64,000 bases of DNA from Lepidodermella squamata (Eukaryota; Animalia; Gastrotricha). Under the pieces are notes generated by a model. It ran no database searches. It was given only the letters and a program-made list of their open reading frames with translations, and was not told the origin of the DNA. Position numbers and translations under genes: made by a program. The first letter of the stretch is position 1. Each line of letters starts with the position of its first letter. Below are positions 4,829 through 57,854 of the stretch, piece by piece. The stretch lies in the NCBI GenBank assembly GCA_047495785.1, contig JBLDXI010000015.1:5022001-5086000 (forward strand), written 5' to 3'.

Positions 4829-7800
4829 TCAACTAGTTATTGTCGTTGTGCGTAACCGCGGAAGAACGCCGCCGGGCGCCAGCGACGGCGCCGGCTGCTT
4901 GTGGTGCTCGTTTACTAGCGCGAGGGGGCCGCACGACGATGCCGGAGTCGAGGTGTCGAGAGCCGGGTCGAGGGCGCCGCTGCCGAACCGCGACGACGTC
5001 GCCGTCCGCTGCAGCGCCAGCGCGTCGCCGCTGCTCAGCGCCGCCGACGCCAACGTCGAGAACAAGTCTTGATCATGCTTCGAGCGCCTGGTTTAAAAAC
5101 AAACAACATTAAGAATTGAATTTCGAAGCAAGTAGACAATGCTTACCTTTGGCGCTTCCGCCGCACGAGGACGACGGCGACACAGAAGACACCGCCTATG
5201 CAAATGGCGGCGAGGCTGGCCAGAACGGCTGGCAGGACTAGGGACGGGGACGAAGATGAGGCCGACTCGAGGCTCGACTCGCCTAGGTTGAGCCCGCGCT
5301 CGGCACGCTGATACTGCGGCACAATCGGGCAGCTGGTGCTATCTAAAGTAGTAACAGAGACTCAATTTAAGAAGATGCTCAATAAGAATGTCAATTAACA
5401 CTTACTGAGTTTGTAGTCTCGCGGCAGGCACTGACGCAGCTCGTCGGGCCGTGCCGTGATTTCTTCGTCGGTCGCCTCGCGGAAGTCGGGCAAGCACTTG
5501 CAAGTTGTGGACGCGGCGTCACAGTACACAGACCGGTACATGTCGTAGCAGACGTTGGTGGCGTTGTCGCAGCGTTCGTTGACCAGCGCCTGGCGCTTGA
5601 CGATCGGCGAGACAGGCCGGCAGCGCGGCGGCTGGATCGTGTCGGTGGGCTCAAAGTCGGGCATGCACACGCACACCTGCTTCTGCGGGTCGCAGTACGA
5701 GCCGAATACGGAGCAAACCGACTCAGGGTTGCCGCAAGCCTGACCGAGCGCGAGAGCTCGGACGCAGGCGGTCTTGTCGGCGTTTGGCCAGAATCCGGGT
5801 TTGCAGACGCAGACGCGGTCAAGGCACGGCCGGTACGTGCAGATCGACTGCAGCGGGCAGCGGGTGTCTTCGATGCACGGCTGGTAGACCTTCTCCTGCT
5901 GGTTGATGATGTAGGCACGCAGGGCCGGTGCGCCGATCGCGCGCTTCTGCTGCGACATGGTGCGAGCGTCGTTGGACGCCAGGTCGGTTTCGGTCAAGTG
6001 CTCGTCGTAGCCGTCGAGGATCAAATCCTCGGCGATGTTGTCCTCGGGCCTGCCGAGTGGGATGATGCGGTCTTCGAACGAGTTGTAGTGGAAGCCGATG
6101 TAGTCGCCAGGCATGACCTGGATCTGGCTGTCGGCTGGTACCGGGTGCATCTGGTAGCCGGGGCCGGTCGTCACGAACGTGTTCTTCTGCACCTGAATCA
6201 TCATGCCTGATGCAAGTTTGCGCCACACGGCAAGGTGAACTGTCTGGCCGGCGGCTGCTGTGCTGAAGAACTCCCACCGTTTGATCCAGCCCTGGCAGCC
6301 GATGGGCAGGCTGGTGAAAATCTTCAGATTGCCACTTCGCCCGCTGTACCGCTCCCACTTGTTGTTCGTGTCTTGCAAGTTGTTCCAGTCGCAGTCGTCT
6401 GTAATTAAAAATGAAAAATTAGCGGATCCAATCAAATTTTCGAGTATTTTTTACCATTTGGCTTGCAAACTGGAGGATCGGTCCACTGTCCATTCGATTG
6501 GCAAGTAACTGTATCAGACTGGCCGACCATCATGTAGTTCGGTTCACATTGGTACTGGAACTGGCCTGGGCCCGAGCCAGAAACACGGGCATTCGGGACA
6601 TTTGGCAAACGGCCACAGCTGACAGTTGTAGCTGAAATCAGGCGAATAGAAATATTAGATAATTATTTAGAAAATGATCAGACTCTATTAACTCAGATTC
6701 TACTATGAAATTATCTGGCGTGTAAGTCTAAGCTTTAGAATTCAGAGTGGATGATGGCTGCGAAAAATCTAAAACCACACGAGATTGATTCATGTTACTT
6801 TTGAACTGATTTCCGAACTGATTCAGCTCAGCAAATGAATCCGATTCTTAAGCATAGCATAGGGTAAGGAGTGATTTCATTATTTTAGGGATTGGGTTGT
6901 TTAAAGGGTATCCAATAATTGGGCTAATAGGCTTACTTTGAACAACAGCCATGACAGATGGCAGACGCCAGTTGCTGAAATGAGGTCCAGTGAACTGAAC
7001 AAGACCACCGCTACGCATGATCTCGTCGTGGCTCGTGTCCTGAGCAAAACCGAAGCTGAATGATTCCTTAGGCTCACGAGGCGAGGATAGCGGGGTAGCG
7101 AATCCGATGCCCACGTCGCGCTGTGGTAGTTTAGTTTCCCTGATTTAAGTAAAAGAAAAAAAACAAGTTATGAACCAACTGTCACAAAGAACTTCCGAAT
7201 AGAGAAAGTATCCAAAAACCGTTCAGGTTTATAGAACCAGAGTAGAAATATAGGTAGATGAATATGAATAAATATGAAGAGTGCTTGATCGTTTGATCGA
7301 TCGGTTGAAAGTGAAGTAAAATTATTCCAGCTTAAAATCGTTACCTTCCGCGCTTATAAGTAAGCGTGTGTCTGATGAACAAAGTCAAGGTTAAATGAAG
7401 CGTTGCAAGCATTAGCGGGGAGAGAACAAACAACAAAAGGCAATGCAAAAAAATCAACAAAATCAAAGCGTGGCAATGATGCACGACGTAGTGACAATAT
7501 AATGAATGGCATGCGGATGGGTGATCGATATAGGGTGAGTGACGGCGGACTTACTTGTAGTGGACGCCGATGACGTCGCCCTTGAGCACAGGAATGACCT
7601 GGTCGTCATCGACATCGTACGTCGTCCAGCCGACCTTGGACGTCGACACCTTGGTGTAGCCGACGAGCCGGTACGAGTTTAGCAGGCCGCGTTCCTTGCG
7701 CCACACGCCCAGATAAATGACAGCCGAGTAGTTGCGGCTGAAAAAGTTCCACCGCGTTACAACACCGGGGCAGTCGAATGTGTAGTTGGTGTAGATGTTC

Positions 7801-10800
7801 AGGAACGACGTCGAGAAAACCATAGGCAGGCGGCTGCCGTTGCGACCAGCCGCGCACTCGTCTGTAATTAGAAAAATAAATTATTAAGCTGGATTGAAAA
7901 AAACTAAACCAACCATTTTTAACACAGACTGGGCGTGGAGTTGACCAGGTCTTGTCGTCCTGGCAAACAGAGCTGGAAATGCCACCCGAGAGGCCAGTGC
8001 CGGCGACGCAGGTGTAGTCTGCGCGTGAGTCGATGCGAGTGCCGTCGCTGAGCGAGTAACGGCCGTACGGTGTGGGTGGTGGCAAGCCGCACCCAGCCAG
8101 ACTGTCACCTCGAGCGAAAATAGCCGGAGCGATGCGATTCTGCACATCGACAGGGTCCATTGAGAGGTACCCGAACTTGGCCATGTCTTCTTGCAACTCG
8201 GCTTCGTTGATCGATTTCGACGTGAACACCGAGAACTGATGGGGAACCAGGGTGCCCGGGTGCAGCTCGTCGAAGTAGGAAATGAATTTCGGACCGTCAG
8301 CCGAGGCGAAGTGGATGCCGAGGAATGAGTCGGCGTCAACTTCGAACTGTTCGTTTTCAGGGATCTTGTAGATGTTGAGACCACGAGTCAGCACTGGTAC
8401 TCGGTTGGAGCCGACCAGGTAGTAAAGGCGGCCGCGGAACGAGCGCCACATGCTCAGGTAGATGACGGTGGTGTTGCCGAACGGCGCATCCGCCCAGAAA
8501 TGCCACTCCTTGATGCGGGCACTGCAGTTGAACTTGAAGTCTGGGAACACGTACAGCTGGCGGGGCAGGACGAGGCGGTTCTGGTTGGACGCGAGGGCCT
8601 CGCGACGACCGGCGACGCACGGGATCGACTGGTGCAACTCGCAGGTCGGTATTTCGGTCCAGCGACCATCGCTGCCGCAAGTTGCACGGCGCGGGCCGAT
8701 GATTTCGTACTCTTCGCGGCACTTGAACTGCACGACGTAGCCGGGCTTGTCGGCGCTGGACAAGTAGTCACTCTTGCCGAACTTGATATCAGGCTGGCCA
8801 CAGAATCCGGGCTCTGCAAATTTAAATTATGGGGTGCAATCTACAAAAAATGTCAGATGAACTTACTGCGAACGATGAGTTGTACGCTGGGCAGAATTGT
8901 CATTTTGTCGCGACCGTACCACGTGAAATTGCCGCTTTCGTCCGAACTGATGAACTGAGGCACTGAGTCCATGAGGCCGGCACTGGTTGACTTGTAGAAG
9001 CAGGTGACGAGATCGGTAGCGTTGAATGGGCCGAGGTTGGTCGCATCGGCGTGCGGGATGACGGCGAGAGATGAGCCTCGCAGACCAGCCACGGCGCCTT
9101 CTGTGTACGAGTCCGAGTCGTAGTAGTGGATGCCGATGAAGTCGCCGGGCAGGACGCGGAAAGTATCGGCGATCGGCAGCACAACACGGCCGATGCGGTT
9201 CGCGTACCAGATGGTTTCGTTAACCAGCGAGTACTGCGTGTCGTTCTGGCGAAGCGCTGCGTTCCAAACCACGCCGAGCGGGCGGTAGACGCGAAGGCCT
9301 ACCTCGGTACCGTCAGCCAGCGCCGAGTAGAACACCCAAGAATCAGCGTCACCGCCGCAAGTCGCCGCCAGGGTTGGACAGGCAAGGACGGCGCGAGTCA
9401 TTTGCGCGAGTTTCGTCTGTGGGACGCTCTTGCCAATGCGGCAGTTCTCGCCGGAAACGATGGCTGGGCAGGTCGGCAGGTCGGACCACGTAGTTCCGGT
9501 CTTGCAAGTGATGACGTTAGTTCCGTTGAGTTCACGCGTCTTGTCCGTGGCGCATCGCAGCTTGAGGGACGAGCCGGATGCGTACGGTCCAACGGGGCTG
9601 GAGCCGACATCGACTTCGAGCGACGAGTCCAACAGAGGCAATTTGCTGCAGCCGGTGAGCACGCACGTGATGTTAGGCGTCGCCCAGCGCAGGTTCGGGC
9701 TGCAAGTCAGGTAGACCGGGCCGGCTTGAGCGGGCGTCATAGCGTAGCCGGGTAAGCATGTCACAAGACGCTGCGAACCGACCGTGTCCTGGCCGACGTT
9801 GATGCTGGCGCCTGGGATTTCCGGAACGCGAATCGTACAACGTTCGGTGACATCTGGAAAATTTCATCAGTTGTTTATTTATTCGTTCATTTTTTTCAAT
9901 TTTTTTCTTGAGGCCAGTCTGCCGGACTGGTCAGTTGAAGGTTTCGTTCAAGGTTTTGGTTTAAAGAATTAAGCCACTAGTTATTTAAAAGTAATTAAAG
10001 TCCGCTAGCACGAACTCGTGTCATTAGCATCGACTTCTTGCAGTCATCACGTGTTGATATTAAGCCGCTCATCACGTAATGACATTAAGCTGCCTATTAT
10101 GAAAATTGAAAAAATACTTACTGCGCAAGCAGAGCGTTTGCACGCCTGAGCTGCCTACAAATTCCCACTGGCCGTTCTCGGTACACTGCGCTTCCTGCGG
10201 GCCGACCTGGAAGAAGCCGGTGTTGCAGATGTAACGGAACTTGGTGCCGCAAGTTCTCGACGGAACTGGGGGTGTCGTAAATGAGTATTGAACAGTCGGG
10301 ATGTTGCCGCACTCGGTTTGAGTACAAACTGGCGGCCTGATAACAGTCCAAGTGCCGTCGACAGCCGAGCACGTGACTGTAGCAATACCGCTGAGTTTGA
10401 AACACGGCGAGTTGCAGGTCGCTCGCGCCGCTGAGCCGCGGCGAACCGACCGCGCGCCGGCAACGTCCGCCGTCCACTGGCCGTTGGTAATTGCCGGCAG
10501 ATCGGCGATGCGGCACTCGTTGTCGCTAGGCACGCCGATCGGGTTCTCGGCGAGGGTGCACGACGGCAGGGCCGACCAGCCGCTCGACGAACACACGATG
10601 GAGCTCGGGCCGTTGAGAGCGTACTGCGAGTCGCAGACAATGTTACGGGTGTCTCCGACGTTCGAACCGCCCGGCATGACGCGGCCGTTGATGACGCTGC
10701 GAGGTTCGCCACAGCCACTCGAGCCACCCGGGCGCGACGCAGCTCCGGCGGCATCGGTATCATCCCGTGTGCAGGTCGGGTAGTCGCTCCAGCCGTTCGG

Positions 10801-13800
10801 CGTGCATGTGATCGAGTCGACGCCGGATCGGGTGTAGCCGTCGTCGCAGCTGATGTAGCGAACGTCGCCGAAACGGGTGCCACCAGGTCGGATGAGGCCG
10901 TTCGAGATGGATCGCGGAACACCGCAGTCTTTCGGCGAGCATGAAGTCGGTGGCGTCGGTGACCAGTTGCCGTTATCCTGGCAAACGACTGACCGGACAT
11001 TAGCTTCGTAGCCGGGTATGCAGATGATTTGACGGGTTGCGCCAACTCCGCTGTCACTTCCAGCTGTGATTGCGTTGAGAACCTGGAGATCAGGGCATCG
11101 CTTTGATTCCGCCGCTGTGAAAAACAACGAAGAGATAACAAATTAGCGATGGCTCGCAAATGAAAGCTGAAAATTGTAAAGATTGAAAGTGCGACAAAGA
11201 AATGAAATGCGCCCTTTAACCCGATTGACGTCAGATTAAATAATTATAAAGAATATTCGGAAAAAAATGAGGTAGAGCAGTTGAGAAAATATAGAGATTT
11301 CGAAGAGAGGATAGAACAGGAACCTGGTTCTTCGCACTGAATAGGCGGCGCCGGGTCCCAGCGGCCGTCTTTCGAGCAAGCGATCAGCGCCCACTGTTTG
11401 CGGTCGGAGAGCGCGAAGCCCGGGTTGCAGACGACGCGCCACGCGTTGCCGCGTTCTGCGCGCGAAGCCGTCGGCAACACCCGGGCGTTGCGAACCCGCG
11501 GCGGCGGACCGCACTTATACCTTTCGGCTAATAACACCAATGAAATTACACACAAAATAGTTACGAAACGGAAAAAAATGATCCAGTGCAAAAAAAATTA
11601 AATTCTATAACGACTCCGTTGATTCATAGATGTAGGTTGATGAAATCGAGCGATTGAACATACCTCTTGAGCAGGTTCCAGGTGTAGTCCATGACGCATC
11701 GGATCTGCAGGTAATCGAGCTCGGGCCGGAGAGCTGGAAGCCGAAATTACACTGAATGCTGCGAGTTGCACCAACTTCAGAGCTACCGCTGGTAATGAAA
11801 CCATTGGAGATGATTGGCTCGGCTCCGCACTCTGTCAAAATGTTTGAAAAAGACACAAAATGAGACAACTTGAAACGCCGAATTTCCTAGCGGAATATCA
11901 TGTTCAGGAAAAACATTTAGCCATTGAATTCCAACGCCAATTATAATAGGTAAAAAGCAACGAAAAAATAACGTTAAAAACCCCGAGTGTGATGTTGAAA
12001 GTCACAGTTAACAACGGGCAAGAATACGAATTAAATAATGGTAAAAATCTCTGCAGGCACTTTCATCACTTCTGTCATCTATCAACTACAATTAACGCTC
12101 ATCAAAAGTTATATTATCGAAAATGTCCAACACAAATGAGGGTAGTTCAGCCGAACGTAAATACGCAGAGGGGTTAACAGCACGAGCTTGGGTTATTTTC
12201 TTGGGTCCTTGCTTGACTTACCGACGAACGAGGCGACGACGCACGACCCGCCCGGGCTGGTCCAGGTGCCGTTCAGGTGACAGCGAAGGAATTCGCTGCC
12301 GCTGACGGCGAACCCTGGATCACAGGCCAGGCGTGCGAGCACGGCCAAGGCCGGGTCGTGGTTTACCGGCGCCAGAATGTAGCGGCCGTTCTCGACAAAC
12401 GGCACGTCTTCGCACACTTTTTTTATCACAAGAATACATACACATTAGAATCCTTGCAATCAAAAAATTCGCACACGAAAGGTATGTATAGATTATAGGT
12501 ATATAGGAAGAGAGCGGGAACATAAACGAAGGCGATGCGGTGAGGTTGAGGGAAACGGGAAAAACTGAACACAAAAGTGCGAGGCAAAAACAGATAGAGG
12601 ACGCGAGCAGCGCACATACTGGTTTTGACGCAGAGTCCCGGCTGGGTCCAGTGGCCGGTCGACAGGCACTGGATGATGTTGTTGCCCATGACTGTGAAGC
12701 CGACGGTGCACTTCAGCACGGCGATGGAGCCGAGCCGAGTGCCCGTCAGCTCGAACGCGCCGTTCATCGTCTCGGGCGGGTCGCCGCAATCTGTGTCACA
12801 CACATCATCGATGTTTTAATTCCGTTCGAAAAAAGGTTCGATTCAACAACATCAGCAATCGCCCAACGCAAGTATACGTTAGTGGTGGAATTGTGAACAA
12901 AGGACGGGAAAGAAAATGGTTGTAATAAGGGTGCATACTAATTGGCAGGCAGCGGCCAGGGGCTGCCCAAGTGCCGTTTCGAAGGCAAATCAGGAACTGC
13001 GAGATGCCGTCCCACACGTAGCCGTCGTGGCAGGCGATTATCCAGCGGCTCTCAACCCCGGTCTCTATCAAATTGGCGTTGCTGACGGTCGGCAGTTGAT
13101 CCGGCGAGCATTCTACGATGAATGGGGAAAATCAGCGTATTTTTCGTTAAAACACGAAGACAGCAACCAACTCCACAGCACGGCGTGACAGCGAACGTAA
13201 ACATAGAAAAACCAGCCAAAAAAGCGCCGATTTGTAACACAAACCACAGAAATAATAAATTGGACGCGCCGAAGCAGTTTGAAAAATAATAAAGCGCGGG
13301 CGAGATAAAGTGGCACCGACATTTTTCTCCACCAAAGCATTCGCGACGTAGTAAGAAAGAACGAAAATAGAATGAAGGAAATAGGCAAAGGTACCGTAAA
13401 ATAAAATATTTCAGGCGACAACGAAAATCCACAAAGCAAAGCGCTTCATAGGTATATATATATATATGATACATACGTAGGGAGGCGGCTTGGCACGAGC
13501 CATAGCTCAGCCAGTTGCCGTCGGCCTCGCAAACGACGCGGTTCGAGCCGCGCATCTCGAAGCCGGCGTTGCATATCAGAACGCCAACGTCGCCGACATT
13601 GAGGCCCTGCGTCATGACGACGCCGTTCTCAACGTACGGCTGATTCGTGTAGCAACCTGTTGATTGTTTTTTTTCACATCAAATCATCATTAAATTGAAT
13701 TTAACCCAGAAATTTAGGGTATTATTATACGATTAATTTTTGTCACACGGTAATTAAGCTAATGGCTCGTGTGGCATATTAAGAACAACGTACCAGCTTG

Positions 13801-16800
13801 TTGACAGTAAGAGGTGACGGACCACTGGCCATCAGCGCCGCACACAACACCGTCGCTGGGGCCGATGAGAATGTAGCCGGTGTCGCAGGTAATGCGGCCG
13901 CGTGCGCCAACGGTGTTGCCGGCGACGGAGATCGAGCCGCGCTGGATCGTAGGTGAGCCGCTGCATTTGAGACCAGAAGCGCGGCACGTTGCAGCAGGCG
14001 GCGTCCACGAGCCGTCCAACACGCACTTGATGGTGGCGTCGGCGCCCGACACGTCGTAGCCGTTTTCACACTGCAGGCGAGCAGTCGCGCCCGGATAGGC
14101 ACGGTCGCCGTCAAACACGTATCGCCCGTATGACACGGTTGGAATCTCGGCGCAAGCTGCACATATTGAAAACAAAACCGCAAATTAGTCATCAACACAT
14201 CGTTATCACACCATCTAATCTTCAAGCGCTACTAATTAAGTACGAAATAGATTTACAAAATAAAAACAAAAGACAAAAGCTGAGGAAGTTGTAACTCAAA
14301 ACACGCAAGACACCATTAATGAACGGAAGCGAGGCGGGTTTACGGACGGTGACAACACAGTCAACAAACTTGGAAGTTGCTCGCAATAGCCGGGATAGGC
14401 CGGCTGCCACTGACCGCGGTCGGTGCAAGTGATGACGATAGGCTCGCGGGCTGTGAAGCCGACGTCGCACTCGAGACTGGCGACGGCGCCGGGGACGACG
14501 CCATCGTCGGTGAGAGCACGGCGCCGAACGGCCGAGCCCGGGCTTTTCCACAACCCGATGACCGTGTAACGGCCATTCGAGATGTTCGGAAGCCCACTAC
14601 AACGAGCTTGGCCTGGTGAAGGATCATTAACCATTGCAATAATGAAATTAAGGTGACGTTTCGATTGAATCATTTTCAAGTGAGGAAGTGGTGATAAACA
14701 AGCAAAAAAATACGAGAGAATTTGTGACATACCTGCGACGCAGATTCCAGGCTGTTCCCAGTTGCCGGTCGAGTCGCACTTGATTGTCGTAGCATTGAAA
14801 GGCCGAAGACCAACTTGGCAGATAAGCGTAGCCGTCGTATCGACAGTGTATGGCTCGTCCGATGAGGGGCGGTAATAACCCTTGTTGACCTGGGGCAAGT
14901 TGTAGCATCCTAAAATTTGAGCAAAATGCCAACTAGTATCGGAAATGGATTCTGTGAATTTCGCTAACTTGTCCGCTGGCAAAGGCCTTGAGCTCCGTCC
15001 CAAGTGCCCTCATCGGTGCAAATCAAGGTCGCAGGTACTAGAAGTTTGTAGCCGTACTTGCAGTCGAAAGTTGCCCGGGTGCTGACAGGGTAAACGCCCG
15101 TGTCGCCAACAGCCAGGTTGTACGAATACTGAGCGCCAATATTTGTCGGTGGTTCTTGGCAGCCTGTAATTGAATTAAAAATACCCGTTAACAAATTGCA
15201 AGAGGGTAGCCGCCACACAAAAGCAAAAATCAAAACAGTTGGTTAGGCCCTATCAGCGGGATTATTTTTTTCACCACCAAGTGGAGGCGCATGCGTGGTG
15301 GTAGTATTAGGACTGACAACAAAAAAGGCAACACAAAAACGAAACGAAAAAATGCCGATTAAAAGCGTATTAAAAGCTACGAAGCTTCGCGATCAAAGAA
15401 ACGCGATTTTGAACTAGGCGTGTGCGAGCGGTTATTCTTGGTAGGTGATGTTGTGCGCCGTCACGGCACACGAGTAAAAGGCACAACACGCAACGACGAG
15501 GAGGGTCGACGTTTCTTACCGGCAGGCGTGCAATCTGGCGGGCGCGTCCACGTTCCGTCAGACTGACAGAAGACGACGCGGGGGCCTGTGTCAATGCGGA
15601 AGCCCGGCGCACACGTCACCGTGCGCTGGGCGCTGATGTAAGACTCGCCGCTTTCGATTCGGCCATTGCGAATCGCCGGCACAGGACCGCAGGAACCTGA
15701 TTTTTCAGTTTCATTCACATTTCACATGATTGTTGATTAGGCAGATTAGGGTTATAAGGCGGAGCGATTAATAAAGATTCTATCTACTATCAACTATACC
15801 CCAACTAAAAGGTCAGTCGGGATCAGTATTTAGGTTTAGAATTAAATTGTCGACTTGTTAAAATCATTAGTTGCATTTAAAAGTGGTTTTTTCGAGGTTC
15901 ATCGAGACGGTGGGGGTGAAACTGACCTCGCGATCCGCCAGCAGCGCCTACAACACAACGTGGCGGCGGGCTGCTCCAGTAAGAGTCCGACTGGCACGTG
16001 ATTGTCGAGCCGCCGCTTCGAACGTAGCCGGGATTGCAAACCACGGTTCGAGTGCTGTTGCAAGTTGACAAACCGTCGCTGATCGCACCGTTTTCGATCG
16101 TTGGCAAACCGTCAGCGCCGCACTCTACAACCAATATTTAGGACGATCCCAGGTGGAATTAGACAAAGGAACTTACCGACGATCTTGCAGTAGAGCTGGG
16201 TCGTTGTCCACAGCAGCTGACGACCGCATCGAATGAACGGTGTTGATTGTCCAGCGCGTTCGTAGCAGTCATTGCAGCGCATTTCCAACACGGCGCCGAC
16301 GCTGCGGTTCGTCGCAGCACCCTCGCCAGTCGGCAGTTTGTTCACCACCCAGTAGCCATTGCCGATGATCGGAGGATCGGGGCAGGCAGCTGTAGTAAAA
16401 TAAGCAAATATCTCAAAGTTTCTGGAAAAATCGGAAATAACTCACATGACTCTTCGGCTTCTTGTTCGTTACCACACAGGCAGGTCGGCGGTTTCGGCTG
16501 CCACTGGCCTGACTCACTGCAGCGAAGTTCGGCAACGCCGAGCATGACGCAGTCGGGCCGTGTGCACTTGTAAGTTGCGATCGAGTTGAATAGGCGAGAC
16601 GAGAATTGGCGCGTTGCCATGTTCACCTGGGGAGGGTGTGGGCAGACGAGCGGCAGGCAAGATGGCGGTGTCGACCACTGGCCGTCCGATTGGCAAACGA
16701 TGCGTGGGAAGTTCTGCATAACGTAGCCGTCCATACAGTCGTACCACCGCTCCGTGCCTTCCTTCGTGCCCTGGCCGCGGAGCAGAGCGTTCTCGACAGC

Positions 16801-19464
16801 AGTCGGTTCGCCACAGTCAACGGTCGAGGCGTGTTCGCTCGGTTGGATGGGGTTGCACACTGGCGGACGGGTCCACTGGCCGGAGTCGAGACACACGATC
16901 ACGCTGTTTCCGGTCATGACGAAGCCAGAATCGCACTTGTATTGCCGGGTATCGCCGTACTGTTGGCCGCCACTGCCGCCGCTCAGATGGCCACCAGCAA
17001 CATCTGGCGGCTTGCCACACCTGCTCGCCGACGCCTGGGTAGTTTTCGGCGCTTCCGTCGTCGCCGTTGTAGTGGTCGACGGTTCAGCGGTTGTCGTAGT
17101 CGTTGGCTTGGGGATTGGCAAGCAGCGAGCAGGCAGGCTCCAAATGCCACCCTTCTCGCAAGTAACGGTCGGAATAGCGGTATCAAGCAGACGGTAGCCG
17201 TCATGGCAGCGAACGTTGCGAGTGGCACCGATTTCGCTCGAGCCTCCGCCGACATGTCCGTTCTCCACCGATGGAACGTCGCCGCAGGTGGACTTGACGC
17301 AACGCGGGGTGCGAGACCATTCGCCTTCGCGGCACGTCACTGTAGCACGGCCATCCTCCATCTCGTAGCCGGCCTGGCAAGCGTAGGTAATCGTCTGTTC
17401 GACAATCTTCAACACACGAGCGTTGTGAACAATTGGTGGCGGTGGGCAAGCATCAGCAGCCGTGCTTTCGATCACCGCAGACATGAGCACCAATCGCTGT
17501 TGCATGGTCTCGCCAAAGTCCTGAACAGGCTGGCTGTCGGCGTCTTGTTTGGAAATGCGAGCTCGGAAGCAGTTGGTGAAGTCTTCTGGTGCGAAGCCCT
17601 CGCTCTCGTCCTGATCGGCAAAGCCAACCGAACCAGCCCGAGCGGATGAGTCGTACATAACACCGATGAGATCGCCAGGCTGCACGGCGATTCGCTCAGT
17701 CTCGGCAACATCGAAGCTCTTAAGGCCAAGAATGTTCGGATAGACCTGGTTGTAGCCGACAAGGCGATACTTCCGCTTGCCGCCGCTGACCGCACGCCAA
17801 ACGCTCAGGTAGGTTGGGGTGCTGTCGTCGGCAGCTGACATGATCTGCCAGCGCTTGATGCGGCCAGCGCATGGCGCCATGACGTTCGGGCAGACATTAA
17901 GCCAGACGCCGGGGCGGCGGCTCGGAACTCGGTTCGAGAGGTTCGGTCCGATTTGACACGAGTCACCTGCGGCAGAAGCTTGAACAGGCGAGTGGGCCAT
18001 CGCCATTTCAGCGAGTTGGCTTGGTGGCAGCGCAGCAGGCCGGGCGTTGTTAGAGCGCTGGTTCGCAATACGAGCCGATCCGCCCTGCACGTGAGCTCTG
18101 ATCAACACGAGGCGTTTAGTCTGAGTATCGCCAAAGTCAAGCGCGTTGGACGAAGAGCGGACATCCTCGACGAAAATGCGCTTTTTGACGCAGATCTGCA
18201 GGTCAGAAACGCGGTAGCCGTCGAGGACACGCTCATCGACGAATGGCACAACGCCGATAGAGGTTGCCGAGTCGTAAAGTACACCGAGCACATCGCCGGT
18301 TTGCACGGCGAAACGCTCAGCTGGTGGCACGTCGTAAGAAGCCGGGCCGAAGTGTGTTGCGATAACGCGAGTCATACCCACAAGGTTGAATTTGGTGCGC
18401 GAACCGGCGGCAGGCCGGAAGACGGCTAGATAGGCGGGGGTGCCGTCTTCGAGCGCACTGAAAAACTCCCAGCGGAATAACTGGCCGTCACAGGCGATAG
18501 TCATAGTCGGGCAAACGTTGAGGAAGTTTCCAGGGATGCGGCTGATCGGCTCTGCCTGGATCGGAACGCCGGTCGTGCAAGTTCCACCGGGACGTGCGAC
18601 CGAGGTCGCGAAGTCCTGTGACGAGTCGCCGTAGGTTGACTGTTGTATCGGCGCATCGGTAGCACGGCGTGGCGACGGCGGGGGCTGCGGAGAGTACGAC
18701 GAATCGGAAACTTCAGCAATGGCCTGCATCATGAGAATGCGGTCGACGTAAGCTTCGCCCAGTGAGAAAATCTTTCCGGGTACATCGAGATCTTGGCCGA
18801 AGACAGCGACCGTGACGCAGTTGTCACGCTCGCGGTCTGTGTAGCCAAGCGTCGCCCATGGTACGACGCCGCCGTAAGAGCGCGGGTCGTAAGCGACTCC
18901 GACGAAATCGCCCGGTAGCACACGGATTTGCTCCTCTGGATCTGTCAGTACGATCTCAACGTAGCCTTTTTGGTTCATCTGGCGCGAGACCTTGCCGACG
19001 AAGGTGTAAACGCCGGCCTCGCCAGTCGGTCGCCACACGATAAGGTGGGCCGACATTCCGTTGTCTTTTATGCTCAGCATGCGCCAGCGAACCAAAAAAC
19101 CGGCACACTTGAACGTCATGGTGGGGCACGCGACCATTGCCACACCGGGGATGCGCGGCGCTACACCTTTCCTTAAGTCTTTTCCAGCAGCACATTGATC
19201 TATTGACAAAAAATCATGAGGCTATTAATAGATGTGGTACATAGGCAAGAAAAAAAACTGACTCGATTCGAGAGCGGGAGGTAGCGAAGTGTTTTCCTCG
19301 TAGAATAGGGCGTTTTCAACGGGTCCGTGATCATCAGCGAGAGACGCGTGCGCGGCAGGCGCGGCACGGTCGAACAGCAGTAACGCAAGGACGGCGTAAA
19401 CGACGGCGCCAGCGTGGCGCCACTTGGTCGTCGACGGCCGCCGTTGCAGCGAAAATCGGCGCAT
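4829..19464 (-). CDS. Giant type I transmembrane protein (~3550 aa): signal peptide, ~29 Sushi/CCP modules, 7 copies of an unnamed ~150-aa domain, 3 EB-like Cys-rich repeats, TM helix and Ser/Thr-rich tail
   Basis: Exons (minus strand): 19464-19263, 19199-16446, 16389-16177, 16124-15927, 15696-15520, 15163-14969, 14909-14733, 14612-14370, 14156-13794, 13656-13477, 13112-12939, 12790-12620, 12416-12222, 11831-11664, 11527-11324, 11114-10122, 9853-8867, 8813-7914, 7861-7555, 7371-7345, 7139-6937, 6631-6455, 6398-5406, 5342-5147, 5087-4829. All introns are GT-AG and phase-compatible. The CCP pattern C..P...NG...C..G[YF]...C...G.W...P.C recurs. TM segment LVLPAVLASLAAICIGGVFCVAVVLV is followed by RRKR. 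Confidence 0.9.
7345..7371 (-). CDS. 27-nt frame-preserving microexon of the Sushi gene (encodes HTLTYKRG)
   Basis: ttgttcatcag|ACACACGCTTACTTATAAGCGCGGAAG|gtaacg. It is phase 2 at both ends, matching the flanking exons, and has no stop. Confidence 0.6.
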
Positions 19465-47648: not shown

Positions 47649-49160
47649 TCATTTCGATTTCAATGTCGCAGATTGTGTCAAAATAAAAAGAGTCACTATC
47701 ATAGCGTTGCTAGCGAGTAGGGCTAGGCCGGAGATCCAGACGAATAGGTAAGTATTTACACCAGCGAATTCGAGAAAGTAAGCTGACGCCAACCAAGATG
47801 CCTGAAATTGGAAAAATTTATCAATGATTTGTTAATAAATAATAAAAAATATCAAATACCTGAGATGCTACCCATAATAGAAGTGAGGCATAGGCGATGA
47901 TGTGAAGTTTTGATCGAAAAAGCGAGATTCTACTATTAAGCTCGTGAATTCGCTTGTAAATTAGCTTCAAATCAAGTAGTGGCAGCAAACATAAGTACCA
48001 TGTATAATACTGAAAAACATTTAATATTGAGTAGTTTTCCATGAAAATACCAAAAACTTACTTGTACAGTGTAAACCTTGTTAAAAACAACGAACACCAA
48101 TGTTATGAGGAACAACGCAAAATTCAGGCTTGCAAGATTTGATTGCTGAACGCATGCGACCGCTATGAGACCGATGAGAAGAATCTGAATGCCAAAGACG
48201 AGCCCAGTGCCAATTATAGGGGGTAGTGTCTCCGGAGCTTGCAAATATATCGCGTAAAAGTAAGGCGAAAAATTGTGCTTGATATCCTGACGCCCGAGGT
48301 GATACAAAAGCGAACTGTGAAGATACTCGTAGCCATATCTAAAATTGTCACACTTTCATAATGAGAAACGAAAATTGACGTCAAATTGAACTCACAAAAG
48401 ATAAAAAACGCAGGTGGCGGCAGCTACCGCGAATGTCGCCGAACAGACAAAGATTGCATTGTCCGTTGTCAACAAGGAGCGAATAAGATTCAATACACCT
48501 TTGACAGAGAATAAACTACATCGACCGCCATTTCTTGCTCTCCGGAAGAACATGAGAAAAGCTGGTAAGAATATGACCGGGTAAATGCGAACATGTATTG
48601 CGAGTCCGTACATAAGGCCACAAAGTGCTGACTTTTCTCGAGATGCGAAGAACAACGTGACAAGTAGGATTATGGAAATGAGCGAATCACAGTTTCCTCG
48701 TGTGGAAATAACGCAAACTATAGGGTTAAACAGCCAAATGGCGGCCCCGAAAACCAAACGCTGCTCCACATCGTTGTCTAGCTTGCTTGTTTTACCGCTT
48801 GTAAGAATTTGATAAATTAAGTAGGCGCATAATATGTCGAAAATTGAGAAGACCAGCTTCCCGAAGTTGACGAAAATTGAGCCGAAACAAGTTGGCAACA
48901 GCAGGTAAGCCACCACTGGTGAATATCGATAGTCTCGTCTAGTATAAGGTGAATCACCCTAACATAATGCTCATTGAAGTACGATCTTTGTTCCGTGAAT
49001 CACATACCTCGCATATTGCTTTTGCTGCTGACGAGAAGACGGTATAATCTATATCTGTGTACTTTACTTTGAGCAGCGAATCATGGATAGAGCCATAAAT
49101 TATCAAAAGGCCCCGAATTACAGCGCCAGATACCAATACAGTAGACAAATTCCACCTCAT
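47649..49160 (-). CDS. PIGM: GPI mannosyltransferase 1
   Basis: VKYTDIDY (DXD motif), SPY...YRYSP, WLFNP...ISTRGN, YHLGRQDIKHNFSPYFY, FNKVYTVQYF.WY and WL..AY.LEF. Multi-TM protein. The stop TGA overlaps AATAAA. Confidence 0.95.
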
Positions 49161-49235
49161 TAAACTTAAAATGCCTGCAACAAGCAACATTTATTTCATC
49201 AAAAAAATAAGAACAATGTTGGTGTCAAAATCTGA

Positions 49236-50039
49236 TTATTCTATTTCATCATCATCGTCTTCGCCTTCTTCCAATAAAACTTTTTGAAATACATAGTATT
49301 CAGGCAACGACAATCGTGCGACCTGCGTTACGAACTCTTTATCGGAAGTATCCAAAATATCCTTTAATGCAGGATTTTTCCCCAAGCGATGTACCCGAGC
49401 TTTCGCGTCCGGAAACTCGAATCTTCCACTGCGTAAGAGAAATAAGTGTCGACATCTTATTCGATCAACAGAGTGACTCAAAGCCCCAGAGAGAGCTACT
49501 TCTCGGGCAATAACCCGCATTCTGGCAAACAGGTAATTCGCGCGTTGAATTAGAGTATCTTTTTCCACTGTTAACACCTGGGGGCGTAACAGAACCATCT
49601 GATGAGCTTGCCGGTCTGTGAATGTTTGACGCATCCACCAGTATGAATCAGCTATAATCAGCTGAGGCGAAACAAAAATATTGGGACAACCAGAGATGAT
49701 ACGGATTCGGTCTTCGAAGCTAAATCCGAGTCTTGATAGACTATTGAATGCTTCTTTAATCGAATTTGGAGGTATCTTTAGAGTTTCAAGTCCCGATGGG
49801 GAAGTTAGGAATTTAATCAAGCTCCAATCGCTTAAGCCGCTTGATGCAAGGGCGTCAATAGAAGATTTAGCATCTTCAAGTCTTTCGTGGCCGTCTTTGT
49901 TGAAAATTGCTTCCAAGCTCGCAGATATGGAAGGCAAGTTGGATCTTTTTGAACATTGTTCCAACCATTTGACAGCCGAATCTTTTGAGCAATAGCCCGC
50001 ATCAACTAAAATCGATGATAGTTGCCTCAGAGAAGACAT
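49236..50039 (-). CDS. MTERF4: Mitochondrial transcription termination factor 4-like (single exon)
   Basis: MTERF-type repeats (PQVL...YLF.RM), RIRCRHLFLLRSGRF..PD, NP.LKDILDTSDKEF...VA, and an acidic C-terminus, all typical of MTERF4. Confidence 0.8.
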   Translation of the reverse strand: MSSLRQLSSILVDAGYCSKDSAVKWLEQCSKRSNLPSISASLEAIFNKDGHERLEDAKSSIDALASSGLSDWSLIKFLTSPSGLETLKIPPNSIKEAFNSLSRLGFSFEDRIRIISGCPNIFVSPQLIIADSYWWMRQTFTDRQAHQMVLLRPQVLTVEKDTLIQRANYLFARMRVIAREVALSGALSHSVDRIRCRHLFLLRSGRFEFPDAKARVHRLGKNPALKDILDTSDKEFVTQVARLSLPEYYVFQKVLLEEGEDDDDEIE

Positions 50040-50097
50040 ACAAGTTTCTAAAAAAAATGCATATTTAAATTAACAAAATTAAATGATTCCCCCATAA

Positions 50098-50311
50098 GGC
50101 CGGTGGCTATAGATGGTAGATGGTCAGGGCGAACGCTAGACTGAAGCTGGCTCACCCAATTTCTAGCTGACTGGCGAGGAGATTTTAGGGTAGAGTAGGC
50201 AGGGTAAGGTAATGACTAAGCTAACGACTTAACGACATGACCTTAAGGTCAACGTATTGGCTAGTCCGACTAGCATGAGGGCTGTACTAGCTGCACATCC
50301 TTTCTTCTGAA
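50098..50311 (+). mobile_element. 214-bp insertion with a 9-bp target-site duplication, SINE-like
   Basis: Direct repeat cccccataa at 50089-50097 and 50312-50320. The 5' end ggccggtggctatagatggtaga resembles a tRNA head with an A box. No TIRs and no clear B box. Confidence 0.5.
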
Positions 50312-50597
50312 CCCCCATAATTGACTTGACTGAGGATTTACGCATCAAAAGAAAATACTTATGGCTACGCGTATCACAGTTTGATTTTTTACAGCGAAGA
50401 AACACTTCATATCGACAAAATTATTTTTTCAACATATCATTAGTTATTAGTATTAGTTACACATATATCTCTTACTAGGTGACGCTGAATGATAGTTGAG
50501 CGGCTAAGTTTTGAAGGTCTATTCGGACCGAAGCCTGAAGGAGCACTTTCAACTTGGACCCTAGACATTTCGGCGGAATCGCTCCGTACACACCTAA

Positions 50598-50650
50598 CAG
50601 GATCAGGATCAGGATCAGGATCAGGATCAGGATCAGGATCAGGATCAGGA
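50598..50650. repeat. (CAGGAT)n perfect hexamer microsatellite, ~8.8 units; the LINE 3' tail
   Basis: Read directly from the sequence. Confidence 0.95.
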
Positions 50651-51495
50651 ATTACGATTTCTCCTCGCCCTGACGGACTCAAGCTTTCGCCATAAGGCGG
50701 AGCTTGTGAGAAAATCGCGAGCTTACGCTCTAGAAAAGTTTGAACTGGTTTACTAACTACTTGATTGAAATCCCTACCCCTGGTACTCCAGTTATTGCTG
50801 ACTGTTTCTCCAGGGCCCAGGCATTAGTGCCCAGGTGGCTTTTCCACTCACTCAGCGAAGCCTACAAACGCCGTCGTAGCAAGAAAGCTACCAAAAGACT
50901 AGTTGGAGAATTATTTACAAGAGTAGAGATAATTTACAAGAGGTAATTCCACGGAGCTAAAATATAGATAATTTAATGACGGAGCTATAAAAGAAAATAA
51001 AGTATATTACATTTGGTTGAGTATAGGCTTTGAAAAATATAAATAGAAATTTGGAAAACTCATTTAGTTTGGCACGTAGTTGTAGACGAAGGCGGCTTTG
51101 GAGTACGGATTGAACGCGACCTGCGGCTGCAGAGAGGCGTTGAGTTCCCTCTTCTTTCGCTCGCTCTTCACCTTGATGATGGCGTCGTGTTTGGCCTGTT
51201 CGCGTAGGAATTCGAGCGTGGCTTGCCGGCACGCCTTTGTGGAAGCGGACAGCCTGATCTTCGCTGGCAGCTGGTTCCACCACTGGATGGCCTTGGTTGG
51301 GAACGAGCGCTGGCCTGTGGCGAGCTTGCACGATGGTTTGACGTACTTCCCGGTGGCGGCGCCTCGAGTGTTGTGGTCATGCTGTTGGTTCATCGGCTTG
51401 ACTAGCGACGAGAGTGCCTCGGGGGTCTCAGGATCCCTGCTGCACTTCCACGCCGAGAACGTCGAGCTGCTTTCAAGGAAACCCGTGGCGCCCCT
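50598..51495 (-). mobile_element. 5'-truncated non-LTR retrotransposon (L2/Crack/CR1 group): ORF2 C-terminus, 3' UTR and hexamer tail
   Basis: The peptide H.HNTRGA...P......QRSF...AI.WWNQLP..IR matches the post-RT C-terminal motif of CR1/L2-group LINEs. Stop at 51064, ~410-nt 3' UTR, ending in (TCCTGA)n. Confidence 0.8.
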
Positions 51496-51957
51496 GTTTT
51501 GAAAATTTCCCGCGTAAATTATGAATTTTGTATCGATTTCTTTTAATTCATTAATTTTAATATGTTTGACATCAAAATATATTTGTTGCACTGATGATCA
51601 ATTGAGATGAAGCGCCCGCGTGAACATCCAAGTCTTGAGTCTGAGTCGGTGAGGAACTTGGTTCTGAAAGGTTGCGCTGCTCTCCAGGGTGGCTGACGGC
51701 ACTCTTGGTTACCGCTGCGTGCTGCATCCGTTAAAGTCCGGATCAATGTTTAAATGCTGTTGCCGCTGTCATCTCGGACCGAGTCCACCTTTCTCTATAT
51801 TTATCACCCATTTTCAACGGTTTCAACTATTTGCACTATCATGTCATTTCTTATTTCGTGAATTAATTGGTTTAGTAGAAGAAAAGATACGAGAAAGCTA
51901 AACGCTAAATGACCAACCTTCATAAATTGCATAGGGTAACGATTATTTCATATTAAA

Positions 51958-53316
<1,359 letters not shown>

Positions 53317-53541
53317 ATTCTAACTGACGAATCAAGGATTTGATTTAAATATGATTAAATAGCCATCCCCGTGACAACTTGTTGTGGTCTTTTAGCAAGG
53401 CTTGCGTTGATATTACTGATTTAGATTTGCACTTCGGAAAATGAGATCTGTATTTATTTTTTGACCCTAGATCATCTCAATGAATGAGTGATTCAATATC
53501 AAAAATATTTTTATTTTAATTAGGTTTGACATTAAATAAAA

Positions 53542-54045
53542 ATGGTCAACACCAAGGGTTACCGCCGCGGCACCCGGTCGATGTTCGCCCGCGACTTCCG
53601 TCGCCATGGCCCCCTCGCCCTATCAACCTACATGCGCGTCTACAAGTTCGGCGATCTCGTTGACATCAAGGGCAACGGTTCCATCCAGAAGGGCATGCCT
53701 CACAAGGTCTACCACGGCCGAACTGGTCGCGTCTTCAACGTCACTAAGCACGCTGTTGGCGTTCTTGTGAATAAGCGCGTTCGCGGTCGCATTATGCAGA
53801 AGCGTATCTGCGTTCGCATCGAGCACGTCAAGCCCTCCCGTTCTCGCGAACAGCATCTGAAGCGCGTTCACGATAACGAGCAGAAGAAACGCGAAGCTGC
53901 CGCGGCCCTCAAGGCGGACAAGACCAAGAAGGTTACCTTGACTCTGAAGCGCCAGCCTGTCGGACCTCGCAAGGCTCACTTCGTTAAAGCCAGCAAGCAC
54001 AAGCCCGTGGAGCTCACGCCTGTTTCGATGGAGAAGGTGCTGTAA
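53542..54045 (+). CDS. RPL21: 60S ribosomal protein L21 (eL21)
   Basis: [49 protein letters not shown] and LKRQP. Strongly biased codon usage. Confidence 0.98.
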
Positions 54046-54186
54046 ATGGTTGCTTTAGATTGATTTAATTATCATCAGTGTTGAGTGAGAAGTGGTCACA
54101 AACAGAAGAAAATTTAAATAAAAGAATAGATATCCAGCTGCATTTCGCTTTATTTTGAAATTGTGTAATAGACCATTAGCCATAAC

Positions 54187-54657
54187 ATGGTGACTTTTGG
54201 CAAATCGATAGCAAGCGAATTTTTGCTGGAAGAAGGAGCAGTATTTTGCAACCATGGCTCATACGGCGCCGTTCCGAAATCTGTTTTCAGCCAGTTGGCG
54301 AAGTGAGACATTCTAAGTTGAAATAATCGGCAACTAAATGACCTTCAACTAGATATAATTAGAAAGGAATCCAGACCTATGGATGCGCCGAACAAGCATT
54401 GATTTATGGTTGAAAAACAGGCAAGCCTTGGCTCCGATGTTCAACACAAGCTCCGCGAACCTGGCCTTTGTGGCGAATACAAAGAGCGGTAAATATGAAT
54501 GAATTGAACTTCAGACAGAATAACCAACTTGAATTGTTAGCCGCGAACGCCGTTCTGTCGAGCATTATTTGGCATCCAGGCGATGTCATAATGATTCATA
54601 ATTTCACGTATGGAGCTGTTAAACAAGCTTCCAAAGATACTGTTTTACGTCATCCAG
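54187..54657 (+). pseudogene. Partial tandem duplicate (exons 1-3) of the PLP C-S lyase gene, frameshifted
   Basis: Collinear with 56288-56766, including both introns. Exon 2 lacks 7 nt (TATAATTAGAAAGG vs TATAATGAGGAAACTGAACGG), which gives an immediate TAG. Similarity stops at the third donor site. Confidence 0.75.
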
Positions 54658-55475
54658 GTAAAAATAGTTACAAAATTTTCGACAGTACCGAGGGGTGTTA
54701 ATTCTGTTAATTCTGAAATTTATGAAATTTACATAAAAGGTGTGTTAGATTATTCCTGAGCAAACTCCTGGCTTCGCTGATTTTACGATTTTTGCTTGAT
54801 TTTTGGCGATCGAAAACATTTTTGCATCAAGTCTGAAAACTAGTGAATAATTCACGCACTCATTTGCATAAGGAATGGAATTGTGAGTTTTCAGTTTTAT
54901 CGACCCTTGCGGCAAGCACGTCAGAAAATTTCCGCAAAAACTTACTTTTCGAAACACCAAATTGTTACTTGCAAGGTGACAGCGAATTTTTTCGGGTCAT
55001 CCTAGTAACCTAGTAACCCATTTGAACTAGTGACCTAGTCCAAAATAATTCCAAATTATGTTCGTAAAAACGGAGGACGACATATTCAGTGGACTTTTCT
55101 TGATGCCAAGTTCTCAAAATCCAATATTAATCGGTAATTAACGTTTTGAAACACTTCAAATGTCATCGAATAATAGTCATCGAGATCTTTCTTCACTGTC
55201 ACAGTATGTTTATCCAAACTCTGCTTCAGATGACTCTTCAGATATAACCCGAATGTTTATTCATTTTTTTGTATCGTGGTATGACGCACTGTCCTGACCT
55301 GGTGCAAAAACGACAATCTTCGAACCACCGCCTCTTTCTCGTGCTGCTCGTGGACTAGGTTGGACTGAACCAGCCTGCGGTATTGTTCTCTGGCCAGGAC
55401 GCCAGCCCGCCCGCTGAGTTGCTGTTTTTCACCAAGTTCTACATCATTACATCTAGGCTCTCTCTTGAACTCAGT

Positions 55476-55934
55476 TACCGTATTTTACGAATTATAAGAC
55501 CCTGCCCTGTATTTTTTTACACGACGTTCAAGCCCTGCCCTGTATTTAAGGTCTGCCATTTTTATTTCGGCTCTGCCCTTTAATTTTTCGAACCTAATCA
55601 GTCACCTGAAGAGTACCTAGATCAACAGCTAAAACCGCCGAATAATCACTATAGCTACTGCCTTCCACCTGTGACTACACGCGTGAAGTGTTTGCTCAAG
55701 TGGATTAAGGTGGATAAAGGACGATTAGTGCACTTACTGACGAAAAATTGCAACCTATCCGACTTTAACCACTTACCCAGCAGGCGCTCATGTAAGCCAC
55801 TTCATAGAAGGCCCTGCCTATTAATACGGTTCTGCCCTTTATTATTTCAATTGAGCATTACCCTCTGCCCTTTATTCCGGTTTTGCCCTATATTTGGGTC
55901 TTGCCTCTTGCCTAATAATTCGTAAAATACGGTA
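55476..55934. mobile_element. Tc1/mariner-type MITE (455 bp plus TA TSD)
   Basis: Perfect 20-bp inverted ends taccgtattttacgaattat and ataattcgtaaaatacggta, including the TA duplication. Subterminal ctgccctgtattt/ctgccctttatt repeats. No ORF. Confidence 0.9.
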
Positions 55935-57713: not shown

Positions 57714-57854
57714 AGTGATGTATCTTCGCTAATAACTAATAACCAAATGAGAGTTACCTTGTTTTTGATTGAATTTATTTTGAATCATTGATTTCGTGAT
57801 TTATTTATGAATTTTGTTGCAAATTTTAATCCCCCGTGCTGTTTTTCATTGTAG

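What the first reader, a model, noticed from the sequence alone, without database searches (positions are those of the whole stretch)
4829..19464. Giant receptor with an unfamiliar architecture: ~29 CCPs interleaved with 7 copies of an unnamed ~150-aa domain
Seen: seven copies (about 19195-18720, 18580-18090, 17960-17470, 9445-8870, 8625-8110, 7860-6940 and 6395-5905) share C..G...P....C.G.I.RW.F.S...[YH]L.VWR...Y.LVG...VP..E.I.V..GD.IG..Y. They are arranged as 3 at the N-terminus, then 26 CCPs, then alternating with single CCPs. Three EB-like repeats, a TM helix and a ~90-aa tail follow. Established: known long CCP proteins such as CSMD (CUB) and SVEP1 (vWA/EGF/pentraxin) use other partner domains. 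Inference: the repeat is a beta-rich ligand- or glycan-binding module held on a long CCP stalk, i.e. an undescribed adhesion or recognition receptor family.
Basis: partly seen in the sequence, partly recalled or inferred. Interest (0 to 1): 0.75.

Follow-up and report, generated by a model that had tools for sequence, protein, structure and literature searches.

The report
Giant Sushi-stalk surface protein, unnamed domain
This is a real, conserved animal gene for a roughly 3,500-residue membrane-anchored surface protein that carries seven copies of a sugar-binder-shaped domain with no Pfam name; the domain occurs in about 2,000 protein clusters from many invertebrate phyla, and its function is untested.

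Summary
On the minus strand, 19464-4829, a 24-exon gene (about 3,533 aa) encodes:
- a signal peptide
- three copies of a ~165-aa domain ("D")
- 26 Sushi/CCP units
- D-CCP-D-CCP-D-CCP-D
- EB modules, one membrane helix and a ~90-aa tail

D matches no Pfam family and no solved structure by sequence. Its AlphaFold model (pLDDT 83.5) is a jelly-roll beta-sandwich. It resembles carbohydrate-binding modules, F-type lectins and phage tail-fibre tips only at fold level (Z up to 8.8).

D is not peculiar to this gene:
- The genome holds at least 151 copies, mostly in D-CCP arrays.
- A profile search found 2,171 protein clusters, in hemichordate polycystin-1-like proteins, a starfish, molluscs, annelids, nemerteans and one choanoflagellate record. 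Most named ones are called "uncharacterized"; the others carry automatic names.

A related species keeps the same seven copies one-to-one at 66-85% identity.

So the domain is unnamed and the architecture is undescribed. "Receptor" and "glycan-binding" remain inference.

The scan met the same domain before in the neighbouring gene (s1-430978).

Verdict: a real mosaic adhesion/recognition-type protein, and a new variant of a known kind. Interest is moderate.

The parts
19345..19464 (-). Start codon and ~40-aa signal peptide, within exon 1 (19464-19263, phase-1 donor)
   Evidence: Translation and DNA: a hydrophobic core followed by A-H-A. The donor GA|GTCAGT pairs with the acceptor at 19199.
18709..19200 (-). 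D1, unnamed jelly-roll domain, 4-Cys type
   Evidence: E 4e-58; pairs with the orthologue copy at 85% identity.
18085..18588 (-). D2, 4-Cys type
   Evidence: E 1.5e-66; 77% identical to the orthologue copy.
17467..17967 (-). D3, 4-Cys type; this is the copy that was modelled
   Evidence: AF2 gives pLDDT 83.5 and pTM 0.82, all-beta.
16480..17448 (-). CCP1-5, in the same exon as D1-D3, with a Thr/Pro-rich mucin-like linker at 17118-17020
   Evidence: Pfam Sushi, 5 stretches, E 4.7e-41; pattern count; translation.
10129..16384 (-). CCP6-24 in 14 exons, all with lengths that are multiples of three (phase 1-1)
   Evidence: Pattern count; splice sites.
9468..9839 (-). CCP25-26
   Evidence: covered by orthologue P0003.
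8868..9452 (-). D4, 4-Cys type, with two loop insertions
   Evidence: (E 2.5e-54).
8641..8802 (-). CCP27
8107..8628 (-). D5, 2-Cys type
   Evidence: (E 2.7e-55).
7924..8091 (-). CCP28
7555..7865 (-). D6, first part (2-Cys type); the exon ends in a phase-2 donor at 7555
   Evidence: (E 5e-41).
6938..7139 (-). D6, second part, after a 415-nt intron
   Evidence: Translation; the acceptor at 7139 fits the phase.
6465..6617 (-). CCP29
   Evidence: orthologue P0045 is 77% identical here.
5905..6402 (-). D7, 2-Cys type
   Evidence: (E 1.3e-49).
5410..5859 (-). Three Cys-rich repeats, EB modules (EGF-like)
   Evidence: Pfam EB: 33.6 bits against a cut-off of 24.3, two stretches. The orthologue P0045 also scores as EB.
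5164..5241 (-). Single membrane-spanning helix (26 hydrophobic residues, then RRKRQR)
   Evidence: Translation and DNA.
4829..5163 (-). Cytoplasmic tail of ~92 aa (5163-5147 and 5087-4832, split by an intron) and the stop codon at 4831-4829; no recognised domain
   Evidence: Splice sites read; no Pfam hit.

Best explanation
The gene encodes a type-I membrane protein of about 3,533 residues that stands far out from the cell surface.

Shown:
- A signal peptide is followed by three heads of an unnamed jelly-roll domain (D).
- Next comes a stalk of 26 Sushi/CCP beads with one mucin-like linker.
- A membrane-near block of D alternating with single CCPs follows, then EB modules, one membrane helix and a short tail without a known domain.
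- D is a disulfide-braced beta-sandwich.
- Each of the seven copies is old, distinct and separately conserved.
- D is a widespread extracellular module whose commonest partner is Sushi.

Inferred:
- The D heads bind an outside ligand, most likely a glycan or a glycoprotein on another cell, a microbe or the matrix.
- The CCP stalk serves as a spacer, so the protein acts in adhesion or recognition.
- It belongs to a family of D-CCP proteins that has expanded in this lineage.
For: Anatomy and intact frames:
- Sushi and EB are confirmed by Pfam.

Fold of D:
- The AF2 model has pLDDT 83.5 and pTM 0.82 and is all-beta.
- Its best structural neighbours are lectin-like and sugar-binding jelly rolls and phage tail tips: Cwp84 lectin-like domain Z 8.6, CBM6/35/36/32 and F-lectins Z 5-6, and a BFVD hit at E 3e-5 with TM 0.63.
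- Cys26 and Cys133 are both present in 13 copies, both absent in 9, and never alone, as expected of a disulfide.

Conservation:
- Orthologue fragments cover the N-terminal, middle and C-terminal parts at 62-78% identity.
- Each copy pairs one-to-one with an orthologue copy, SH-aLRT 84-100.

Family and partners:
- The genome holds at least 151 copies, in D-CCP arrays.
- The profile search found 2,171 clusters.
- Partner domains are all extracellular: Sushi in 24 of 76 proteins, then EB, PAN, C-lectin, ApeC, CUB, Kringle, F5/8C and SUEL lectin.
Against: - No binding was tested.
- Fold matches at Z under 9 are in the range the tool itself calls common for models without a clear relative.
- The near-invariant residues (W40, R58, D99, G102, Y105) lie in strands and may be only structural.
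- No expression data could be reached.
- The tail has no signalling motif that I could recognise, and the alignment to the orthologue model stops at the membrane helix.
- The organism is not identified.
Confidence: 0.55

Rival explanations
1. It is an innate-immune or self/non-self recognition molecule. The expanded D-CCP family would be a variable repertoire, the D heads would act as pattern-recognition lectins, and the CCP arrays would work as in complement-control proteins.
For: - The genome holds at least 151 copies, in tandem arrays on several contigs.
- The seven copies within the gene are only 26-40% identical to one another.
- In other animals D sits beside lectin-type modules: C-lectin, ApeC, SUEL and F5/8C.
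Against: - Each copy is well conserved between two species (66-85%). That fits fixed partners better than fast-evolving specificity.
- There are no polymorphism data.
- No complement or death/TIR-type signalling part is present.
Confidence: 0.2
2. It is a structural surface-coat or matrix-anchoring protein. D would be a protein-protein packing module, not a lectin, and the molecule would tether mucus, cuticle or matrix to the cell.
For: - The protein is very long and has a mucin-like Thr/Pro linker.
- EB modules are known, from general knowledge, in nematode surface and matrix proteins.
- D also occurs in a perlecan-like mollusc protein and in a VWD/C8 mucin-type starfish protein.
Against: The fold neighbours are mostly sugar binders. 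There is no direct evidence for either role.
Confidence: 0.15
3. D is only a diverged member of an already named family, such as DUF4082, SPRY or another galactose-binding-like domain. "Unnamed" would then be a sensitivity artefact.
For: - DUF4082 scores E 0.001 with one of 28 copies, and SPRY scores E 0.0017 (two of 28 copies match SPRY).
- In the Atlas, DUF4082, Lectin_like and PHR are the nearest named clusters, at 0.85-0.87.
- PHR domains and the Cwp84 lectin-like domain appear among the fold matches.
Against: - The DUF4082 model touches only one of at least 151 genomic copies, at 19.1 bits against a cut-off of 28.4.
- Atlas scores under 0.9 are leads only.
- The Foldseek PDB search gave no match at E 0.001 or better.
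- The profile search of PDB sequences gave only chance hits.
Confidence: 0.1

Closest known systems
Long CCP mosaic proteins of vertebrates (CSMD1-3, SVEP1/polydom)
   Same: Very long type-I or secreted proteins. They are built from dozens of Sushi/CCP units interleaved with a second globular beta-sandwich module, and their exons are phase-1 symmetric.
   Different: The partner here is not CUB, vWA, HYR, EGF or pentraxin; Pfam finds none of these. It is the unnamed D domain, plus EB modules next to the membrane.
Neighbouring paralogue in the same genome
   Same: It has the same two building blocks and lies on the same strand, starting about 16 kb beyond the window's start. Its D copies fall in the same 4-Cys clade.
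   Different: It is larger, with a different number and order of units. I did not re-derive its gene model.
Polycystin-1-like proteins of hemichordates (XP_070579640 Ptychodera flava, XP_077979562 Glandiceps talaboti)
   Same: They carry four D copies at the far N-terminus, next to a WSC domain.
   Different: The rest is PKD/REJ/GPS/PLAT plus an ion channel. The window gene has none of these and only one membrane helix.
Jelly-roll sugar-binding modules and phage tail-tip domains (Cwp84 lectin-like domain, CBM6/35/36/32, F-type lectins, PHR, DUF4082)
   Same: They share the overall beta-sandwich shape: Z 5-8.8 over 100-150 residues, and a BFVD hit at E 3e-5.
   Different: No sequence relationship reaches any family's threshold. 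Identity in the structural alignments is 4-11%. D's conserved motifs (C..G, W.F, VWR, GD.(I/V)G..Y) and its one or two disulfides are its own.
Wreath domain of sponge aggregation factors
   Same: It is also an unnamed, lineage-expanded beta-sandwich domain of giant adhesion proteins.
   Different: The Wreath domain is about 300 aa, vWFD-like with an Asp-Pro cleavage motif, and restricted to demosponges (PMC11670116). D is about 165 aa and gave no vWFD match. This genome is not a sponge's.

Membership tests
Sushi/CCP (PF00084) | Match to the Pfam model above the gathering score; four Cys and a conserved Trp in about 60 residues | tested here: met
   139.4 bits against a cut-off of 20.7 for the first five units. 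There are 29 units with the C..C..C..W..C pattern.
EB module (PF01683) | Match to the Pfam model above the gathering score | tested here: met
   33.6 bits against a cut-off of 24.3, two stretches, in window:5398-5859:-. The orthologue P0045 scores 32 bits.
DUF4082 (PF13313) | Match to the Pfam model above the gathering score (28.4 bits) | tested here: not met
   None of the seven window copies matches. One paralogue elsewhere reaches 19.1 bits.
CSMD family | CUB domains alternating with Sushi units | tested here: not met
   No CUB hit in any exon scanned, even at E up to 10.
SVEP1/polydom | vWA, HYR, EGF/EGF_CA and pentraxin domains together with Sushi | tested here: not met
   None of these was found in the exons scanned. 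The CCP-only exons were checked by pattern only.
Polycystin-1-like | PKD repeats, REJ, GPS, PLAT and an 11-helix channel part | tested here: not met
   These are present in the hemichordate proteins that share D and absent here. The window gene has a single membrane helix.
Galactose-binding-domain-like / CBM jelly-roll fold | Structural superposition clearly above background with conserved topology | tested here: inconclusive
   The best Z is 8.5-8.8, and 5-7 for CBMs and F-lectins. The tool notes that a best Z of 7-8 is typical for models with no clear relative. Foldseek PDB found nothing at E 0.001 or better.
Sponge aggregation-factor Wreath domain | About 300 aa, vWFD-like sandwich, Asp-Pro motif between strands 1 and 2, found with Calx-beta | tested here: not met
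   D is about 165 aa, gave no vWFD among its fold matches, and has no Calx-beta partner. The Wreath definition comes from PMC11670116.

The most novel reading that the evidence does not exclude
D is an ancient extracellular domain family, possibly older than animals, that no curated library has named. In this spiralian lineage, D-CCP arrays have expanded to at least 150 copies as a recognition repertoire (adhesion, allorecognition or microbe sensing). The window gene would be one conserved long-stalk member of it.
Probability: 0.3. Interest if true: 0.7.

Novelty: new variant of a known kind. Interest (0 to 1): 0.5.

Why it matters
A compact, confidently folded domain has no Pfam name, no solved structure and no known function. 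It occurs in about 2,000 protein clusters across at least six sources: hemichordates, echinoderms, molluscs, annelids, nemerteans and one choanoflagellate record.

Defining it would annotate thousands of "uncharacterized" invertebrate proteins, including the outermost part of hemichordate polycystin-1-like channels.

The window gene has seven separately conserved copies on a CCP stalk, so it is a natural construct for testing what the domain binds.

The finding is not a new kind of system. It is the familiar mosaic-adhesin design with a new bead.

Tried and rejected
- **Pfam scan, frame error.** My first Pfam scan of the Cys-rich region (window:5398-5900) was out of frame and gave a false blank. 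One search corrected it.
- **Sponge origin and Wreath domain.** The Atlas pointed to Porifera clusters. The Wreath domain is a different size and fold, and the genome has at least 166 Cys-loop channel matches, so it is not a sponge's.
- **DUF4082.** It touches one copy, below the cut-off.
- **PDB by sequence.** Only chance hits to bL19m and AbrB.
- **Word-index protein search with the first exon.** One hit only, the orthologue P0001.
- **Literature search on Sushi + EB + uncharacterized domain.** Nothing relevant.
- **Spliced protein.** All searches were exon by exon, by reference, and the length comes from adding exon lengths.
- **Organism.** Not identified.
Full report
**What is in the sequence**

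The minus strand between 19464 and 4829 holds a string of open segments with GT/AG borders.

- Exon 1 starts at the ATG at 19464. It encodes a basic N-terminus, a hydrophobic core and an A-H-A site, which is a signal peptide. It ends in a phase-1 donor after 19263, and the next acceptor is at 19199.
- I read 24 exons. Their lengths add up to 10,602 nt, that is 3,533 codons plus a stop, and the total is a multiple of three.
- Every CCP-only exon is a multiple of three with phase-1 borders.
Everything was searched exon by exon, by reference.

- The seven copies of the ~165-aa domain (here "D") sit at the stated places.
- They align at 26-40% identity with the motif C..G...C.G...W.F...YL.VWR...Y.LVG...GD.IG..Y.
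- Against their own profile they score E 5e-41 to 7e-68.
- A pattern count gives 29 CCP units: 26 after D3, then one between D4/D5, D5/D6 and D6/D7. Pfam confirms Sushi.
- D6 is the only copy split by an intron (7555 | 7139).
- The three Cys-rich repeats after D7 are EB modules, at 33.6 bits against a cut-off of 24.3. An earlier blank was my own frame error.
- A 26-residue hydrophobic helix followed by RRKRQR (5241-5164) comes next. A ~92-aa tail without any Pfam match ends the protein at the stop at 4831-4829.
- A Thr/Pro-rich, mucin-like linker lies between CCP2 and CCP3.

**What D is**

- No Pfam family matches any of the seven copies at E up to 10, apart from a chance-level SPRY score.
- Profiles of 7 and of 28 copies find nothing real among all PDB sequences.
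- AlphaFold2 on the seven-copy alignment gives a confident all-beta model: pLDDT 83.5, pTM 0.82, about 11 strands.
- Foldseek against the PDB gives no match at E 0.001 or better.
- The exhaustive structural scan gives best Z values of 8.5-8.8. These are a cyanophage capsid protein, the lectin-like domain of Cwp84, a mycobacteriophage tail tip and a PBCV-1 capsid protein.
- Below them comes a long run of carbohydrate-binding modules (CBM6/35/36/32), F-type lectins and PHR domains at Z 5-7.
- Against predicted viral structures, the best hit has E 3e-5 and TM 0.63. Phage tail-fibre and collagen-like tail proteins follow.
- The protein-language-model Atlas independently gave Lectin_like, DUF4082 and PHR as the nearest named clusters. 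All were under 0.9, which is a lead only.

D is therefore a jelly-roll sandwich of the general sugar-binder shape, and it cannot be assigned to any named family. The DUF4082 model touches just one of the genome's copies, at 19.1 bits against a cut-off of 28.4.

**An internal check on the fold**

Two Cys positions (4 and 33 of D3) are in all copies that cover them. Two others (26 and 133) are both present in 13 copies, both absent in 9, and never present alone. This is what a second, optional disulfide would give. D1-D4 are of the 4-Cys type and D5-D7 are of the 2-Cys type.

**The gene is real and conserved**

Three protein fragments predicted from unnamed ENA assemblies map onto the window by tblastn:
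- P0001 covers D1-D3 and CCP1-3 at 62.5% identity.
- P0003 covers CCP25/26-D4-CCP27-D5-CCP28-D6 at 64-78%.
- P0045 covers CCP29-D7-EB-membrane helix at 69-77%.

In a tree, each window copy pairs with one copy of these fragments (SH-aLRT 84-100, 66-85% identity) on long stems. So the seven copies diverged long before the two species split, and each has been kept since. The alignment to P0045 stops at the membrane helix, so I have no evidence that the tail is conserved.

**D is not peculiar to this gene**

Within the genome:
- The window's genome (121 Mb, 151 contigs) holds at least 151 matches.
- They cluster on contigs C15, C19, C55, C13, C21, C32, C74 and C7.
- The C15 cluster starts about 16 kb beyond the window's start. 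It is the neighbouring giant gene that an earlier agent described as 46 Sushi units plus 13 copies of an "unnamed sugar-binder-shaped domain" (s1-430978). The scan has therefore met this domain before, on adjacent DNA.
- Three other arrays that I cut out are alternations of D and CCP-like units, like the membrane-near half of the window gene.

In public data:
- A profile of 28 copies, read against 1.84 billion representative proteins, finds 2,171 clusters at E 0.001 or better and 350 at 1e-10 or better.
- The members that carry names are listed here:
  - polycystin-1-like proteins of two hemichordates
  - an "uncharacterized" starfish protein
  - a perlecan-like snail protein
  - abalone and whelk proteins
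  - two nemertean proteins
  - three annelid proteins
  - one choanoflagellate single-cell record, where contamination cannot be excluded
- In the hemichordate channels, four D copies form the extreme N-terminus, ahead of WSC, PKD, REJ, PLAT and the channel.
- The starfish protein combines D with discoidin, VWD/C8, SUEL lectin and TIL domains. Another protein combines it with astacin, ApeC, CUB, Kringle and C-lectin.
- Among 76 relatives, the commonest partner is Sushi (24 proteins). cEGF, EB and PAN follow with 5 each, then Kringle, astacin, CUB and C-lectin with 4 each.
- The partners met most often are extracellular; a few single hits are not (for example a tyrosine phosphatase and a WW domain).

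**How it most likely works**

Shown: the protein is a single-pass surface protein. Its three distal D heads sit beyond a 26-bead CCP stalk, and four more D units, each flanked by CCPs, lie near the membrane.

From general knowledge, a CCP unit is roughly 3.5-4 nm long, so the stalk could hold the heads on the order of 100 nm from the membrane if extended.

Inferred: the D units are the binding parts. This rests on fold resemblance to sugar binders and on the company D keeps in other proteins, not on any assay. The near-invariant residues lie in strands and may be structural. The loops vary in length (two insertions in D4), and binding sites often sit in such loops in this kind of fold.

Nothing supports a signalling role, so I prefer "adhesion or recognition surface protein" to "receptor". 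I put about 0.55 on this reading. The immune/allorecognition and structural-coat versions are the main alternatives, and there is a small chance that D turns out to be a diverged member of a named family.

**Organism**

It is not identified.
- The Atlas hinted at sponges, but the genome has at least 166 exon-level matches to Cys-loop channel ligand-binding domains. That does not fit a sponge.
- Other agents call it an unidentified spiralian (s1-373991, s1-368383). I did not test that.
- No innexin was found, which is odd for a spiralian. This remains unexplained.

**Comparison and novelty**

The design is the known one of CSMD and SVEP1: a long CCP array interleaved with a second globular module, built from phase-1 exons. 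The second module is a domain without a name. The exact order (D3-CCP26-(D-CCP)3-D-EB-TM) matches no described family that I could find.

I rate it a new variant of a known kind. The point of wider use is the domain family itself.

Noticed in passing
G000 genome-wide (e.g. C9:5351758-5352375, C33:971-1025k): There are at least 166 exon-level matches to the Cys-loop channel ligand-binding domain (PF02931), some in tandem clusters, and no match at all to Innexin (PF00876). The first rules out a sponge. The second is odd for the spiralian that other agents take this animal to be.
   Followed up: no
G000:C19:851000-881000 (L029, L030): A long minus-strand array holds at least 20 D copies alternating with CCP-like units in large open frames of up to 767 aa. 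It is apparently one or a few further giant D-CCP genes.
   Followed up: partly
G000:C55:515530-516012 (L018): This is the only D copy in the genome that the Pfam DUF4082 model touches (19.1 bits, below the cut-off). It may be a bridge sequence for testing a distant link between D and DUF4082.
   Followed up: partly
window 17118-17020 (-): A Thr/Pro-rich linker of about 33 residues lies between CCP2 and CCP3. It is probably O-glycosylated and is the only mucin-like spacer in the stalk.
   Followed up: no
Protein Atlas result for D3: One of the three nearest unnamed clusters (score 0.95, 96 members) is 62% bacterial, mostly Actinomycetota. One relative carries bacterial-type Hexapep and another carries AbfB. 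The family may reach into bacteria, or these records may be contaminated.
   Followed up: no
window 47649-58620: Earlier first-reader notes on this window (s1-410459, s1-410460) propose near-zero-spacer gene pairs and a trans-spliced operon. I did not examine them.
   Followed up: no
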